DNA of 64,000 nt from Saccostrea echinata (taxonomy: Eukaryota), in NCBI RefSeq assembly GCF_033153115.1, contig NW_026889750.1, forward strand, positions 17,484,001 to 17,548,000, given 5' to 3'. The notes below the pieces were generated by a model that had not been told where the DNA came from, did no database searches, and saw only the letters and a list, made by a program, of their open reading frames with translations. Both the position numbers and the translations under genes were made by a program. Shown one piece after another: positions 5,718 to 11,561 of the stretch; within the stretch, counting starts at the first letter, position 1, and the number at the start of each line of letters is the position of its first letter.

Positions 5718-6364
5718 TTTTTAGATTCAATACCTATATTCTTAGACCAAACACCTGTGTTTGTAAAGCTCTGTTATTGTTTTTGTTCACGTTTTACCAG
5801 AAGTATTTGATTTGCTAACACTGCAAACATCACTGAACACAAACAGACAACACTGGTATGTTGGTTTTGCTTTCTTACATTTCTATTTTGACTTTTCTTG
5901 AATATAGTTATATATATATTATTATTATTACACCACATTATTATTTCCCACTTTTCTTATATTAAAGATATTAAAGTCCAAGGATGTATCATAATGGCAA
6001 TCAAACACACAAAAAATTCTTAGTTTTAATAATTTTCAGATAAAAAGAGTATCTTAAACGCTTTCAGTTTGTAATATTATAATATCGATTTGAAACGCTC
6101 TTAATTGCAACATATAGGTCATAAAATTCTATCTAAAGCTTAAAAGAATACAAACTTCAAATCTGTGTCTATCTTAAGCAATTCTTTTAAAAAGAGGAGA
6201 AAACTTGACTTGTTATTATTTATTTCATCTTCTTGCACATTATCTTTCATATTTAAAAGGAGTTATATATCATAAAATCTCTCAACAATGTACAAGTGTT
6301 ACAAAAATTATAACAAACAACAATGGAGTTATGTGTGTCGTTGTAGATCTTCTTTAGGAGACAT

Positions 6365-6528
6365 TTAACCCTGTGTGGCCTTTGGCCCTCCACCTGCTCC
6401 ACCACCCATCATACGCCTCAACATCATCATCTGCATCAAATCGTCCATGGCCATCATTTCCCCGCCTCCCAGCATCATCAATCCTAGTAAGTTATTTCCT
6501 CCGAACATTCCCCCTCCTGGGCCCATTA
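6365..6528 (-). CDS. Met/Gly-rich protein last exon
   Basis: CCACAG acceptor; C-terminal part of ORF 6365..6628; TAA stop. Confidence 0.88.
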
Positions 6529-7981
6529 CTGTGGATAAATCAGAACAAATACTCAGTATAGTGCTAAAACGTGAATTCACAGCAGATTTGTTGAGAAGTT
6601 CTTCTAACGCCTTGAAGGAGGTTTTCATCGATTTAATTTTTGTTACAGGGCAAAATATATCGCTATCATATATAGTTTTTGCAGTTATTTCAATCTTTCC
6701 ATTTGGTTATTTGAAATAAAAAATATAGATGGAACTGCATATCAGATGTAATTTTCCCCAAAACTTATTTATTGGTAGCTGCGTTTTGTCGTAAGAGTTA
6801 CCTCTAAAACTCCAAATTCAATGTGCTAGCAAGCAAGATTTATTCAAAATTGTTTGGACCAAAACATGCAATTACATGTATGAATACAATAAGATAAAAA
6901 TAATAATAATTATAATAAAAAGACGATTTAGTGAATATGAGGGGTACTTGTTTATCAAAAGATACTTACATGACTTCATCATCATATAGTTCATCATAGT
7001 TTCTGAAAAAGAAATGTCATTACTAAAATACACAATGAACGACACAGCATGATACATTCATCTGTAATAAAGACTTAGGCCTTTGCATAGTATCTGTTTA
7101 TTTGCATGTACGTTTCTTTCTGAATGCTTAATACAACCCAATAGATATGGTTCTAAATCAACGATTGAAGAGTTTCTATGCCTGAAAGTTCTCCTGAGAT
7201 TCATGAATTTCTCAGCTCATCAACATGACCAAGTCAGTCCCCCAAGGAAAGAGAAGATTTTGTAAAGGTATATTCATTTCTAATAAAATAAAAACTTTTC
7301 CAAATGGGAGCTGATCATTGGTGACACAAATTTAATCATTTGACAAAGAAATCATCATAGTAAACTTGAATGTTTTTTAACCAGTAAAGAAGATTATAAA
7401 AGGTGTAACGAATTTTTAATGTATAACCAGTTTAGCCCATCCTCGAGGTCTGAACCCTGACAAGAAATTCACAGTTTTGGTTGACGGCAAACTGAGCATC
7501 ATAACATTATAATCATGTTTAAAAAATTGTCTGCTATATGTCTCAGAGTAAAGATTTTCAGATCTAATAAGTTTTCAATATATGACAAATTTATAGACCC
7601 ACAATGGGGTCTACGTCATGGGCATGAATTTCACTACTAGTAGATAGATAAGAGTTTATTACAGTTTGCTAGGTGGTAACCCAAGAGTAAAGAATACTAC
7701 ATATATTATAGAGTAAAGAATGTAAATTACTCAATCAAGGAAAATATTACAAGTAAACTTTCTATTTTTGTAAATTACAATCAATATCGGTATCACTCTA
7801 TATACTGATGAGCGACTTTCTCCTAGAGTTACTATATCACTATAGGAGACCAAAGTGTTCATAGCACACCTGACATTCCAGATGACGGCTGTTGTCTTGA
7901 AGCCCCCCTGGATCTTGATCTCTGGCACCACGCACAACCAACCAGTAAAAGAGCAGCAATTAGAGCCAGAAAGGTCTTCAT
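6365..7981 (-). CDS. Small secreted Met/Gly-rich protein, 102 aa, 3 coding exons (7981-7870, 7002-6970, 6528-6365)
   Basis: Exons of 112+33+164=309 nt joined by two phase-1 GT-AG introns give MKTFLALIAALLLVGCAWC-QRSRSRGASRQQPSSGMSETMMNYMMMKSLMGPGGGMFGGNNLLGLMMLGGGEMMAMDDLMQMMMLRRMMGGGAGGGPKATQG*. Classical signal peptide; AATAAA on the minus strand at 6224-6219. Confidence 0.88.
6970..7002 (-). CDS. Met/Gly-rich protein coding exon 2 (33 nt, ETMMNYMMMKS)
   Basis: TTTTTCAG acceptor, T|GTAAGT donor, phase 1-1. Confidence 0.85.
7870..7981 (-). CDS. Met/Gly-rich protein coding exon 1 (signal peptide)
   Basis: TTTTAG acceptor at 7989-7988, ACAATG start, MKTFLALIAALLLVGCAWCQRSRSRGASRQQPSSGMS, donor TCAG|GTGTGC. 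Confidence 0.85.
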
Positions 7982-9737
7982 TGTAATCTAAAATCAATAC
8001 CCAAATAAGAATAATGCCGATAGAAAATGATTATGGAGATCTTAATAGGAAATAGTTGCATTTGACATTAGTTCTTTGGGAAAAAAAAAACTTTTTATCT
8101 TCAAATCACTGTAATTTACAAGTGCAAATTACAGCATATGAATACATATTCAATGTCATCTAAATTCCTGTTTGCCGTTTAACCACAGTGCTTTGAATAT
8201 TATATCAAATGTATATGATATTTTTCAAGTTTATAATTTCCCTCCTGAATGACCTCCATGTTATTTTTCAGATACACTCTTCAACGCCTGAACGTCAGCA
8301 AAAAAGAAATCAGATTTCAGATATTAATGACGTTGCCTCAAATTAAGGGATGATGAATACATTTTTATCATTTTATAGTGTATTCAGGTAAGGTTGTGAC
8401 TCAAAGTAATGCAAGATTTGTTCGAAGTTTCGTTTAGGTTTTCTGCTCAACCAATATTTTAGAGTTGCACTAATTAAATGTTTGAAATAAGAAAAATCAG
8501 AGCGAATATTATACATGTACATATAATTGTTTTCCTCTTCCTAGAACTTTATTAAAATCATATTTTTGAATTGTTGGCGAGACTGCATAATTTAGTTTCT
8601 TCTAAATTAATAGGTGAAAAGTGACCTTCTTCTTTTTAAATCAATATCTAGAGATGCCGTGCTTCGTAAATGCATCAGAACTCCTTCCTACCAAATAATG
8701 AACAAATCTATCATAAATTCATATATTTATCGAGCATCAAAAGAAGTGATATGACGACACGTGATATAGTTCTGACAGTTAAATGATATGTTTGACTCGT
8801 ACGTCACATAAATCTGTCCGTCTAGTTCTGTAGTATGCTCACTTTTATTTTCACAAAAATTATTTGGGATCAGGGAGGGAAAATAAGATAAACTTTATTT
8901 CTTTGAGCCCATTGGGTGTCTTAAATCTTAACTGAAGAACTGAAGAAAATTGTAATCTCTATGTATATCCATTAGAAAGACATTATAGGCCTATGCCAAT
9001 ATTTTTACGTACTGTTTTTTGACTACTTTAAGAATTATTTTAGATAATTGGTCGGTTATCATGAGAAACTAACAGATCTAGTTGGTTGACAGTTGCATAG
9101 TGCAAAAAATACTGGAGTCACAAGTTCTAGCGTCAGTTTACTGAATTTTGTTACTAATCCAAACTGATAGAAAAGAATATATCCACTGCTTTCTTTCTTT
9201 TTCTCTTATGAAAAAATACAACACCAAAAACATTTTAAAGGTAAAATACATGCAGCCATAACCAGAATTACGGGCATATCAGGTACTAATATTACACAAG
9301 AAATTATTTTGAAAACAATTCACTATCCGATACTGAGTATATCATTACATTCGTTTTTTTTTAATTATATTAAAATATAAAAATGATGTTTTAAAAAGTA
9401 AAAGACGATCCAGGACCAAGAAATAAAAGCTAGTAAAATACTTCAAGCAAGAATGAATTCAGACCTGCTAAACATTCAAAAGAAACAAAAATTGATGCAT
9501 AGAAATTTTATTTAGCTCCATGGACCCTCGTGCCCATTAGAATGACTCAAATACAAAATCATGATTGTTGAACATTCTAACGCTTATCGGAGGAAAATAC
9601 ACGTTCTCAAAATTACCAGTATCCAGCGGAATTGTTTAGCGCTATAGTTTGAAAATTTATTTGAAAAATTGCAGACGGGATTATTCATCAGTAAATACCT
9701 AAATTTTAGACTGAAAAAGAAAGTTCTAAATATTTAC

Positions 9738-9820
9738 CTGTCTAGTATAATGCAACAATGTAGGTCAGTTTTCAATCCTTTCTGATTTGACATATGATAT
9801 GCACTTCGGTATATAAATAA
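9738..9820 (-). promoter_or_regulatory. Putative TATA-like box and non-coding first exon of the Met/Gly-rich gene
   Basis: Minus strand: TATTTATATA (~9819-9810), Inr-like TCAGA ~25-30 nt downstream, strong donor CAG|GTAAAT at 9738/9737. The ATG exon has an acceptor 6 nt upstream of the ATG, so an upstream exon is expected. Confidence 0.5.
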
Positions 9821-10952
9821 TATTTCCCTGCAATTAATATATGGAGGTATATTTTTATTTATCATTTATTACATTCCCTTGTCCGCTGTTTTGACACAAA
9901 TCGCCCTGCTGTCAGGTGCGTGACGGATAACCATTCCTTCAACATGCGCAGGTCCATTTCAATAGGCTTGACCGTATTGGTCGGTTTTTCCTTTATTTGT
10001 GAGTGTGTATATATATTGTCCTGCGAAAGGTTACCGGTACTTGCTCGCACTGCTGATGAAAGTAGTACATCAAAACATAGGCAGGATTCATTAAACACTT
10101 TAGGCCGGAGAGCAACAAATATTTACGGCGTAGTAAAAAAAAAATATGCACGTGTATAATGTAGAAGTTTGCTAGAATATTAATATAACTTATAGTCTCA
10201 AAAAATGACCAAAGAAATATAAAAAAAAAGTTGCATAATGAGATACAAGTAGACATAAATATAAGACAGGGCGATAAATTAGATTTAGGCTGAGTTATGA
10301 TGCATGGAATTGTTGGACTCGTTATGGTATACATCTAACTATATGCATACTCTAACTGCTACGCAGTCCTGCATCTTAATTACATGTAGATGTTAAGATG
10401 AAAGTAGAAAGAAGTATTTCTTCGTTTCATCGAATTTTTTTTATCGAGTTTTATACTACAGGGTGAACGAAAATACTTCATGAAAGAGAGCAATAATCCA
10501 ATATATGCGTGCAATTAAGAATTATATGACTGTTCATTTAAATTGCATGATTTAATTAATACTCATTAATAATACGCACCATAACTGAATTATTGCTCTT
10601 ATCAACTGGATTAATGATATCATTTCATTCAATATATACGTGCATCCATTCTTTAAGAGAGAGAGCATTTTAAATTAATAATGACATTTTTAACATATAT
10701 CCGTCATTGAAAAATTATCTTTTATTGCTGCTCTCGTTGAAGAAAAATATATTTATGCGCATCAATTCTGATAAATTGAAATTTTGTTTATATTTCACTT
10801 TAACTTTATATCAATTGATATATATTAATTGCATTAAACAGATAAAGAAATGATTTATACCTAGCTTTAAAATTGATTTTGTGAACTATAAATCTACCGC
10901 TTTGAAGAACATCATCACTTCAATATATGAGATCAATGATTGAATTGTTTCG

Positions 10953-11095
10953 CGCATCAAATCAATTATTGCACGCAATAAATGAAATGATTTTCGCATC
11001 AAATCAATTATTGCATGCAAAAAATGAAAATTTTCGCATAAAATCAATTATTACACGCAATAAATGAAATATTTTTGCATCAAATCAATTATTGT
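10953..11095 (+). repeat. ~41-bp tandem repeat, ~3.5 copies
   Basis: Unit CGCATCAAATCAATTATTGCACGCAATAAATGAAATGATTTT repeated with few changes. Confidence 0.8.
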
Positions 11096-11400
11096 TCACA
11101 TCTATTTAATCGAAAAGCGTTTCAAATTTTTAATGTACTTATTTCAATTAATGAAAGCAATAATTGAGTTTATGCTACATGCATCTTCAAATATAAATGT
11201 AAAGATATCCTTAAATATTTACATTTCCAATGTCTTTGTCCAAGATAAAATTACAAATTGTAAAAACTCTTTATTTCTACATAAATCTACTGGTTCATCG
11301 ATAGGCGCGGTTAAAAAAAAATCACGTGCGGGGCGGGACAAATAGAGACAGAAGCGGGGCTATTAGCACGGGAATTTGCAGAATCAGGAGCATGTAAATA

Positions 11401-11561
11401 TAAGGAATAACTGTCAGATTTTTTGGATTCATGACGATGATCAATCGATTGGCTTGCGTGATAATTTTATGCATAAACGCCTTCGGCGTTTATGCAAATT
11501 ATCACGCAAGCCACTCGATTGATCACATCATGAATCCAAAAAATTAGACAGTTATTCCTTA
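11401..11561. mobile_element. Fully palindromic fold-back MITE (161 bp)
   Basis: TAAGGAATAACTGTC...GACAGTTATTCCTTA; the arms pair almost throughout around a CTTCGG apex. Confidence 0.8.

What the first reader, a model, noticed from the sequence alone, without database searches (positions are those of the whole stretch)
6365..9820. Cryptic secreted Met/Gly-rich microprotein gene: candidate bivalve shell/ligament matrix protein or processed peptide precursor
Seen: three exons with canonical phase-1 introns give a 102-aa ORF that the ORF track splits. It has a 19-aa signal peptide (MKTFLALIAALLLVGCAWC) and an 83-aa mature part with 19 Met, 19 Gly and no Cys: a basic RSRSR N-terminus, MM/MMM clusters alternating with GGG hinges, an RR dibasic site, N-terminal Gln and C-terminal Gly. 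Known: Gly/Met-rich secreted proteins occur in bivalve hinge ligament (abductin, Met-rich ligament proteins) and nacre (MRNP34). N-terminal Gln can cyclise to pyroglutamate and C-terminal Gly is the PAM amidation signal. Inference: a lineage-specific structural, biomineral or redox (Met-oxidation) protein that I cannot match to a named family.
Basis: partly seen in the sequence, partly recalled or inferred. Interest (0 to 1): 0.8.

Follow-up and report, generated by a model that had tools for sequence, protein, structure and literature searches.

The report
Oyster methionine-rich secreted microprotein gene
This is a real, spliced and transcribed small oyster gene for a 102-residue, probably secreted protein that is about a quarter methionine and a quarter glycine; the eastern oyster has an unnamed counterpart, and what the protein does is still untested.

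Summary
They give 102 codons, and the 83-residue mature part has 19 Met, 19 Gly and no Cys. All three predicted junctions, including the 5' leader intron 9738/7987, occur in assembled contigs of public runs. Runs X1, X2 and X4 (study P1) show all three; X5 (study P2) shows two. The skipped ends read GT..AG on the minus strand.

The gene is single copy in its genome. A profile search of 1.84 billion proteins found 5 relatives. One is the full-length Crassostrea virginica 'uncharacterized protein LOC111112419'. It is collinear with all three coding exons and matches both split codons.

Pfam, PDB, the ESM Atlas and the paper searches named nothing. So this is an oyster-restricted orphan family, already annotated but uncharacterised in a sister species.

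Two defining features of abductin, tandem decapeptide repeats and a Cys/Tyr N-domain, are not met. The shell/ligament and peptide-precursor readings remain untested because no tissue information could be obtained. The scan earlier noted other Met-rich gene clusters in this genome. This gene shows no sequence match to any other place in the genome.

The parts
9738..9824 (-). 5' leader exon (non-coding for the main ORF). Its only ATG, at 9793, opens a 21-codon upstream ORF.
   Evidence: Contig of X1 runs 9824..9738 and then joins to 7987 (table 8). There is one ATG in the 87 nt. The uORF translates to MSNQKGLKTDLHCCIILD.
7988..9737 (-). Intron in the 5' leader (1750 nt), GT..AG
   Evidence: Joint 7987/9738 'skips 1750', ends CT..AC on the + strand, in X1, X2 and X4 (table 5).
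7870..7987 (-). Coding exon 1. Main ATG at 7981-7979. It carries the signal-peptide-like segment MKTFLALIAALLLVGCAWC followed by the basic QRSRSRGASRQQPSSGMS. The uORF stop TGA (7980-7978) overlaps the main ATG.
   Evidence: Contigs cover 7870-7987. It aligns to P0004 residues 2-38, with 0 of 2000 shuffles reaching the score.
7003..7869 (-). Intron 1 (867 nt), phase 1, GT..AG
   Evidence: Joint 7002/7870 in 4 of 4 runs.
6970..7002 (-). Coding exon 2, a 33-nt micro-exon (E)TMMNYMMMKS(L), phase 1-1
   Evidence: It is present between both joints in 4 of 4 runs. It aligns to P0004 residues 40-49.
6529..6969 (-). Intron 2 (441 nt), phase 1, GT..AG
   Evidence: Joint 6528/6970 in 4 of 4 runs.
6365..6528 (-). 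Coding part of exon 3: the Met/Gly-rich conserved core MGPGGGMFGGNNLLGLMMLGGGEMMAMDDLMQMMMLRRMM, a variable tail ending in Gly, and the stop TAA at 6367-6365
   Evidence: 28 of its 53 positions are invariant among 4 sequences. It aligns to P0004 residues 50-105, z = 18.5 against shuffles.
6205..6364 (-). 3' UTR. AATAAA lies at 6224-6219. The contigs of X1 and X4 end at 6205; the X2 contig runs on to 6135.
   Evidence: table 8. The hexamer was read.

Best explanation
Shown: a single-copy, spliced, transcribed oyster gene with four exons, three of them coding. It is the ortholog of Crassostrea virginica LOC111112419 and encodes a 102-residue protein.

Inferred: the N-terminal segment has the architecture of a cleavable signal peptide (n = MKT, h = FLALIAALLLV, c = GCAWC, with small residues at -3 and -1). 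It would take the protein into the ER and be cut after Cys19. That would release an 83-residue, Cys-free, largely disordered chain. In this chain three short Met-lined helices, roughly SETMMNYMMMKSL, NNLLGLMML and EMMAMDDLMQMMMLRRMM, are separated by Gly hinges.

Most likely function (a guess from composition, secretion signal and taxonomic restriction): an extracellular component of the oyster's secreted matrices, such as the mantle secretome, the shell/ligament organic framework or an adhesive layer. It would work by Met-mediated hydrophobic self-association and possibly Met oxidation or cross-linking. It would be an accessory component, not the rubber-like elastomer itself and not a classical neuropeptide.
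For: Gene reality:
- All three joints have GT..AG ends in contigs from 2 studies.
- There is no second genomic match that could be a retrocopy.
- Of the 4 variants seen in the coding sequence, 3 are synonymous and 1 is Ala17Val in the signal segment.

Orthology:
- P0004 = XP_022305619.1 aligns collinearly with exon 1, exon 2 and exon 3. Shuffle z-scores are 12.1, 4.5 and 18.5, and 0, 1 and 0 of 2000 shuffles reach the observed score.
- The split codons Glu and Leu equal P0004 residues E39 and L50.

Secretion:
- The n/h/c architecture and the Cys|Gln-Arg junction are conserved in the window and in P0004.

Disorder with short helices:
- The AlphaFold2 model of P0004 has mean pLDDT 56.7, with helices at 3-23, 37-50, 62-69 and 77-90.

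Matrix-like character:
- The mature part is 23% Met and 23% Gly with no Cys.
- Met-rich regions are common to insoluble nacre, prism and ligament proteins of Pinctada (PMC7591529, abstract and section 6).
- The family was found only in oyster-like sequences: 5 hits among 1.84 billion representatives.
Against: - No tissue, proteome or localisation data could be obtained. Run names and tissues are coded.
- The sequence is not repetitive, unlike abductin and most low-complexity matrix proteins.
- Known Met-rich shell proteins are much larger.
- Four Arg follow the hydrophobic segment within 10 residues (C-flank charge +4, N-flank +1). By the charge-difference rule (recalled) this argues for an uncleaved, N-out/C-in anchor rather than a signal peptide.
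- No signal-peptide predictor was available.
- C. virginica isoform X1 places 23 residues in front of the hydrophobic segment.
- The structure model has low confidence.
Confidence: 0.4

Rival explanations
1. Precursor of a processed, end-protected secreted peptide such as a hormone, pheromone or antimicrobial. Signal cleavage would expose Gln, which cyclises to pyroglutamate. The invariant RR would be cut by a prohormone convertase. The C-terminal Gly would be converted to an amide.
For: Gln follows the predicted cleavage site in both full-length sequences. RR is invariant in alignment A1 and is present in P0004 and P0005. The last residue is Gly in the window, in the C. virginica group and in P0003, although the tails differ. 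The contigs are deep relative to the other contigs laid on the stretch, which is only a weak sign.
Against: There is only one dibasic site. Conservation runs across it (MMM-x-RRM-[MF]). The peptide after RR is the least conserved part. The product before RR would be about 66 residues with about 17 Met, unlike any neuropeptide I know (recalled). The family is oyster-only, whereas most molluscan neuropeptide families are widespread (recalled). No Gly-Lys/Arg amidation sites are present.
Confidence: 0.2
2. Single-pass membrane microprotein. The N-terminal hydrophobic stretch is not cleaved and acts as a reverse signal anchor, leaving the Arg-rich flank and the Met/Gly-rich tail in the cytosol. 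There the flexible Met surfaces would bind partner proteins.
For: The 17-residue hydrophobic stretch has a mean Kyte-Doolittle value of 2.39. Its flank charges are N +1 and C +4 in the window, and +1 and +3 in P0004. Isoform X1 of C. virginica makes the segment internal. Weak Pfam matches of exon 1, below the curated cut-offs, are to the small membrane proteins MAP17 (E = 0.019) and melan-A (E = 0.12).
Against: The n/h/c architecture, with a Gly at the h/c border and small residues at -3 and -1, is canonical for cleavage and is conserved in both species. The Pfam matches are below threshold and lie in hydrophobic stretches. Isoform X1 is only a prediction.
Confidence: 0.15
3. Extracellular thioether-based metal (Cu(I)/Ag(I)) binder or sacrificial methionine antioxidant. 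Clustered MxM and MxxM spacings on flexible helices would capture soft metal ions, or would be reversibly oxidised.
For: There are 19 Met with 0 Cys and 0 His in the mature part. Met positions are invariant across lineages. MxM and MxxM spacings are visible. Extracellular copper handlers use Met-only motifs, and oysters hyperaccumulate Cu (both recalled, not from a call).
Against: There is no homology to any known metal-binding family. The paper search for methionine-rich + copper + Crassostrea gave 4 listings, none on such a protein judging by title and abstract start. The argument is purely compositional.
Confidence: 0.12
4. Not a protein-coding gene: a spliced non-coding RNA whose ORF arose by chance.
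For: The 5' leader holds an upstream ORF whose stop overlaps the main ATG, which could dampen translation. No peptide evidence exists.
Against: The reading frame is conserved through all three exons and both split codons in C. virginica. Of the 4 coding variants, 3 are synonymous. The Met richness is unique within the 64-kb window.
Confidence: 0.03

Closest known systems
Crassostrea virginica uncharacterized protein LOC111112419 (XP_022305619.1, isoform X2, 105 aa; XP_022305612.1, isoform X1, 128 aa)
   Same: Same architecture: a signal-like segment, Cys|Gln-Arg, a basic/Ser stretch...SGMS-E-xMxNxxMMKS-L-MGPGGGM..., the invariant core LGGGEM..MDDLM.MMM.RRM, and a tail ending in TQG. tblastn against the window, with the low-complexity filter off, gives 64% identity over exon 3 and 51% over exon 1. 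It is collinear with all coding exons.
   Different: The tail after RRM differs in sequence and length. It carries two extra N-terminal residues and has a predicted longer isoform. Its function is equally unknown, and no paper in the searched library names it in its main text. Supplements could not be searched.
Abductin (scallop hinge-ligament rubber protein)
   Same: Secreted, Gly- and Met-rich, low in Pro. One stretch, GGGMFGG, resembles the GGFGGMGGGX unit (unit as given in PMC13052691).
   Different: There are no tandem decapeptide repeats. There is no Ala-rich N-domain with two Cys and cross-linking Tyr; the mature part has 0 Cys and 1 Tyr. It has an acidic, conserved helix and an RR site. 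No abductin sequence was available for a direct comparison.
Pinctada Met-rich insoluble shell and ligament proteins (LMP, NU-5, P,NU-5; MRNP34)
   Same: Extracellular proteins with methionine-rich regions. The authors propose that such regions build insoluble scaffolds (PMC7591529, abstract and section 6).
   Different: The sizes given for these proteins are about 45-180 kDa, with acidic or repeat domains. This one is about 9 kDa, non-repetitive, and has no sequence relative outside oysters. MRNP34 is known to me only from the reference list.
Met-only metal-binding motifs and Met-rich flexible tails (Ctr1 'Mets' motifs, SilE/PcoE, GroEL GGM tails)
   Same: Clusters of Met with MxM and MxxM spacing, Gly-Met richness, and disorder with conditional helices.
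   Different: The resemblance is of composition only. The Ctr1 and SilE/PcoE comparison is recalled, not tested. The GroEL paper (PMC12571646) was seen only as a search listing.

Membership tests
LOC111112419 family (oyster orphan protein) | Collinear sequence similarity over the whole protein, beyond composition | tested here: met
   Local alignment scores of exons 1, 2 and 3 against P0004 were compared with 2000 shuffles each. The z-scores are 12.1, 4.5 and 18.5, and 0, 1 and 0 shuffles reach the observed score. The matches fall at P0004 residues 2-38, 40-49 and 50-105.
LOC111112419 family (oyster orphan protein) | Residues at the exon junctions agree with the spliced model | tested here: met
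   The split codons read Glu and Leu (by eye). P0004 has E39 and L50 at those places.
LOC111112419 family (oyster orphan protein) | Orthology rather than paralogy (single copy, synteny) | tested here: inconclusive
   It is single copy in the window's genome.
Abductin | Gly/Met-rich domain built of tandem GGFGGMGGGX decapeptides | tested here: not met
   The 53-residue exon-3 piece has a single GGGMFGG and no tandem unit (read directly). The feature is as given in PMC13052691.
Abductin | Ala-rich N-terminal domain with two conserved Cys and conserved Tyr | tested here: not met
   The mature part has 0 Cys and 1 Tyr, and its N-terminus is Arg/Ser/Gln-rich.
Abductin | Located in the hinge ligament (resilium) | not testable with these tools
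   Tissue labels of the runs are coded. No proteome data were at hand.
Neuropeptide / prohormone precursors | Cleavable signal peptide | tested here: inconclusive
   The n/h/c layout and small -3/-1 residues are present and conserved, but the downstream flank is strongly basic. No predictor was available.
Neuropeptide / prohormone precursors | Conserved peptide(s) delimited by basic cleavage sites, with less conserved spacers | tested here: not met
   There is a single RR, conservation is continuous across it, and only the tail after it is variable.
Neuropeptide / prohormone precursors | Amidation donor Gly | tested here: met
   The terminal residue is Gly in the window, in P0001, P0002 and P0004, and in P0003. 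Whether it is amidated is untested.
Shell matrix proteins | Protein detected in a shell or ligament extract; transcript in mantle | not testable with these tools
   No proteome or tissue data were available. A motif search of paper main texts gave no biological hit. Supplements are closed.
Met-motif Cu(I) binders | Measured soft-metal binding through MxM/MxxM thioethers | not testable with these tools
   The motifs are present by reading. Binding needs an experiment.

The most novel reading that the evidence does not exclude
An oyster-specific secreted protein that uses only methionine side chains (19 Met, no Cys, no His) on Gly-hinged, conditionally folding helices. It would act as an extracellular soft-metal (Cu(I)) buffer or as a reversible Met-sulfoxide redox sink. 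That would be a new animal class of thioether-based extracellular metal or redox handler in a famously copper-accumulating lineage.
Probability: 0.1. Interest if true: 0.65.

Novelty: new member of a known kind. Interest (0 to 1): 0.33.

Why it matters
The protein databases searched here held no entry for this gene from the window's own species. It also defines a small oyster-restricted family with an invariant Met-studded core. Such lineage-restricted secreted low-complexity proteins are the usual raw material of shell, ligament and adhesive innovation in bivalves. A non-repetitive member of about 9 kDa is easy to synthesise and test for self-assembly, Met oxidation and metal binding. The finding is nevertheless ordinary in kind. 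It is one more uncharacterised taxon-restricted secreted protein, already annotated as 'uncharacterized' in C. virginica.

Tried and rejected
- Named families: Pfam gave nothing for exon 3 and only sub-threshold hydrophobic matches for exon 1. It gave nothing for P0004 or P0006. A PDB profile search had a best E-value of 0.34, to unrelated enzymes. The ESM Atlas gave no usable hit for exon 3 or for P0004.
- BLASTP masking: BLASTP with compositional adjustment fails on the exon-3 piece (E = 23) although the homology is plain. This probably explains why search for related loci confirmed none of its 168 pattern matches. I replaced it with tblastn run with the filter off and a shuffle control.
- DNA of relatives: both metagenome scans were blank. 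No intron positions, synteny or dN/dS could therefore be obtained for relatives.
- P0005: it looked like a fusion with a zf-UBP domain. That part maps to another contig of the window's genome (C2, about 9.96 Mb) and is Pfam PF02148. I treat P0005 as an assembly chimera or a fusion specific to that source, and use only its first 40 or so residues.
- Fold search: not run, because the model is of low confidence (pLDDT 56.7).
- Third homologous-protein search: not used. The exhaustive profile search had already covered the question.
- Antisense ORF: the 114-aa ORF at 6375..6719 on the + strand is rejected as a mirror of the Met/Gly codons. All splice ends fit the minus strand.
- Papers: there was no hit for the LOC identifier. 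Six short motifs gave one irrelevant chemistry paper. Searches for Met-rich + oyster + signal peptide, Met-rich + copper + Crassostrea and Ostrea/orphan/secreted/mantle gave, judging by the listings, nothing about this protein. PMC10543319 has no mention of methionine. Supplementary tables, where a LOC id or a proteome hit would sit, could not be seen.
- Earlier scan notes: a look-up by sequence was blank.
Full report
**What is there.**
- 7981-7871 gives MKTFLALIAALLLVGCAWCQRSRSRGASRQQPSSGMS.
- 7000-6971 gives TMMNYMMMKS.
- 6526-6365 gives MGPGGGMFGGNNLLGLMMLGGGEMMAMDDLMQMMMLRRMMGGGAGGGPKATQG followed by a stop.

The single base left at the end of exon 1 (g) and the two at the start of exon 2 (aa) make Glu. 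The t at the end of exon 2 and the ta at the start of exon 3 make Leu (read). Both introns are therefore phase 1. Counts were summed over the pieces: 100 whole-codon residues plus the two split codons make 102. The part after Cys19 has 83 residues with 19 Met, 19 Gly and no Cys. Splice-site contexts are canonical. In the six-frame translation of the whole 64-kb window, the only stop-free 53-residue windows with 13 or more Met are 14 overlapping windows in this same frame, out of 4123.

**Transcription and splicing.** The look-up of sequencing runs listed five runs that hold 5-8% of the sampled words of 6250-9850. That is about what exons alone would give. They are on record only as 'RNA? (a guess)'. 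I laid four of the five (X1, X2 and X4 of study P1, organism A; X5 of study P2, organism B) on 5900-10500.
- Joints 6528/6970 (skips 441) and 7002/7870 (skips 867) are in one contig of each of the 4 runs.
- Joint 7987/9738 (skips 1750) is in X1, X2 and X4.
- All skipped stretches read CT..AC on the + strand, which is GT..AG on the minus strand.
- The X1 contig (562 nt) covers 9824-9738, 7987-7870, 7002-6970 and 6528-6205.

Contigs cannot give level, strand or true ends. The X1 and X4 contigs end at 6205, 14 nt after an AATAAA at 6224-6219, and X2 runs on to 6135. Low-depth unspliced contigs lie in the introns (6783-6992 in X2, 7675-7860 in X4). They may be pre-mRNA or carried-over DNA. A processed DNA copy is unlikely to be the source of the joined form, because exon 1 and exon 3 each match only their own place in the 923-Mb assembly. 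Four differences fall in the coding sequence: three are synonymous (Gly22 and Gly45 of the exon-3 piece, and Gln20) and one is Ala17Val in the signal segment.

**The leader.** The 87-nt leader exon has a single ATG, at 9793. It opens a frame of 18 codons, a split AG|A codon (by eye), and then Leu-Gln-stop. Its TGA (7980-7978) overlaps the main ATG (7981-7979). I have no evidence on whether this matters for translation.

**Relatives.** Two searches gave the family.
- A search restricted to the exon-3 residues of the unspliced genomic ORF found three unnamed proteins: P0001 and P0002 from ENA and P0003 from JGI. These are prokaryote-style ORF calls that run from intron into exon 3. Against the window piece they are 77, 74 and 72% identical, and 28 of the 53 positions of the window's piece are invariant. 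The conserved core is M-GGN-LLGLM-LGGGEM--MDDLM-MMM-RRM, with Gly as the last residue.
- A profile of that alignment, run against 1.84 billion representative proteins, found 5 proteins at E <= 0.001. The new ones are P0004 and P0005.

P0004 is XP_022305619.1, 'uncharacterized protein LOC111112419 isoform X2 [Crassostrea virginica]'. A 128-residue isoform X1 (P0006) sits in the same cluster. P0004 is full length and collinear with my three pieces, at residues 2-38, 40-49 and 50-105. The residues between the pieces, E39 and L50, are the ones my split codons give. Composition-preserving shuffles reach the observed scores 0, 1 and 0 times in 2000. P0005 carries the family's core at its start and then a zf-UBP domain (PF02148). 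That second part maps to another contig of the window's genome, so I take P0005 for a chimera. A search with P0004 itself returned only P0004, P0002 and P0001. The window is therefore from an oyster; I did not determine the species. The family is seen only in oyster-like sequences, within the limits of these databases.

**No named family.** Pfam gave no match that reaches its curated cut-off, the PDB gave no significant match and the ESM Atlas gave no usable hit. No paper in the searched library holds the LOC identifier or, in a biological context, the motifs. Supplementary tables could not be searched, and differential-expression lists or proteome hits for this gene may sit there.

**Anatomy and likely mechanism.** The N-terminus has the layout of a cleavable signal peptide: n = MKT, h = FLALIAALLLV, c = GCAWC, with Ala at -3 and Cys at -1. 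The same layout and the same Cys|Gln-Arg junction are in C. virginica. Against this, the flank after it is very basic, with net +4 in 15 residues against +1 before it. By the charge-difference rule (recalled) that favours a reverse signal anchor. I had no predictor, and I put secretion at roughly 0.7.

The AlphaFold2 model of P0004, built with the shallow alignment, is of low confidence (mean pLDDT 56.7). Besides the signal segment it shows three short helices, at 37-50, 62-69 and 77-90, separated by Gly-rich loops. This fits a mostly disordered chain with conditional helices and gave no basis for a fold search.

My best reading is a secreted accessory component of an oyster extracellular matrix that associates through its Met-rich helices. 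It rests on composition, taxonomic restriction and the literature on Met-rich insoluble shell and ligament proteins (PMC7591529, abstract and section 6). It is an inference, not a result.

**Comparison with known proteins.** Passages of PMC13052691 describe abductin as follows:
- an Ala-rich N-domain with two conserved Cys and conserved Tyr;
- a Gly/Met-rich domain of GGFGGMGGGX repeats;
- very little Pro.

Here there is no Cys, one Tyr and a single GGGMFGG, with no tandem repeat. Two defining features are therefore not met, and the protein should not be filed as an abductin. The Pinctada Met-rich proteins whose sizes the paper gives are about 45-180 kDa.

For the peptide-precursor reading, the Gln after the signal, the invariant RR and the terminal Gly are real and conserved. 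But there is only one basic site, conservation runs through it, and the piece after it is the least conserved.

The metal/redox reading rests only on composition and recalled analogies.

**Earlier notes of this scan.** Two other places of this genome were noted as clusters of secreted Met-rich, abductin-like genes (s1-808025 and s1-803100). I did not examine them. My own-genome searches with exon 1 and exon 3 found no second match at E <= 10, so this singleton is not a recognisable sequence relative of them. If those clusters are the ligament elastomer genes, that role is already taken.

**Verdict.** The gene is real, expressed, single copy and conserved among oysters, and it belongs to an uncharacterised, apparently oyster-restricted family that C. 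virginica RefSeq already annotates. Its function is open, and the tissue of expression is the missing and easily obtainable datum. Interest is modest.

Noticed in passing
window 9793-9738 and 7987-7978, minus strand: The only ATG of the 5' leader opens a 21-codon upstream ORF. Its TGA stop overlaps the main start codon (the sequence reads ..AATGA..), an arrangement that could couple termination to re-initiation. The upstream ATG has a weak context: C at -3 and T at +4.
   Followed up: partly
window 6013-6045: A 32-33-nt stretch just downstream of the gene lies inside many otherwise unrelated contigs of all four runs (lengths 108-2627 nt). Their loose ends on both sides are partly alike between runs (tables 7 and 8). 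It looks like a fragment of a dispersed, transcribed repeat.
   Followed up: no
window 10953-11117 and 11401-11561: About 1.1-1.7 kb upstream of the gene's start there is a tandem array of 40-42-nt units (3.5-4 copies). Next to it lie two nested, nearly perfect inverted repeats (34 nt at 94% complementarity and 30 nt at 97%). The whole looks like a MITE or foldback element.
   Followed up: no
window 9875-10134 and 10172-10318: Run X5 alone has low-depth unspliced contigs (depth 6 and 2.4) just upstream of the leader exon. They could be an alternative upstream start, an unrelated transcript or DNA carry-over.
   Followed up: no
P0005 (Logan contig); own genome C2:9958915-9960746: P0005 starts with this family's core and continues into a zf-UBP domain. 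The genomic match of that domain is on a different contig of the window's genome. This is probably an assembly chimera.
   Followed up: partly
window 6375-6719, plus strand: The longest mechanical ORF of the region (114 aa, Pro/Ile-rich) is the antisense mirror of the Met/Gly-rich exon 3. It is not a gene, since all splice ends fit the minus strand.
   Followed up: yes
P0006 (C. virginica isoform X1): The predicted longer isoform puts 23 residues in front of the hydrophobic segment. If it is real, the segment would be an internal anchor rather than an N-terminal signal peptide.
   Followed up: no
window, whole: The window is AT-rich (GC 0.27-0.41). It has only 5 mechanical ORFs of 110 aa or more, so it is gene-poor around this gene. 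It holds 175 N, which I did not examine.
   Followed up: no
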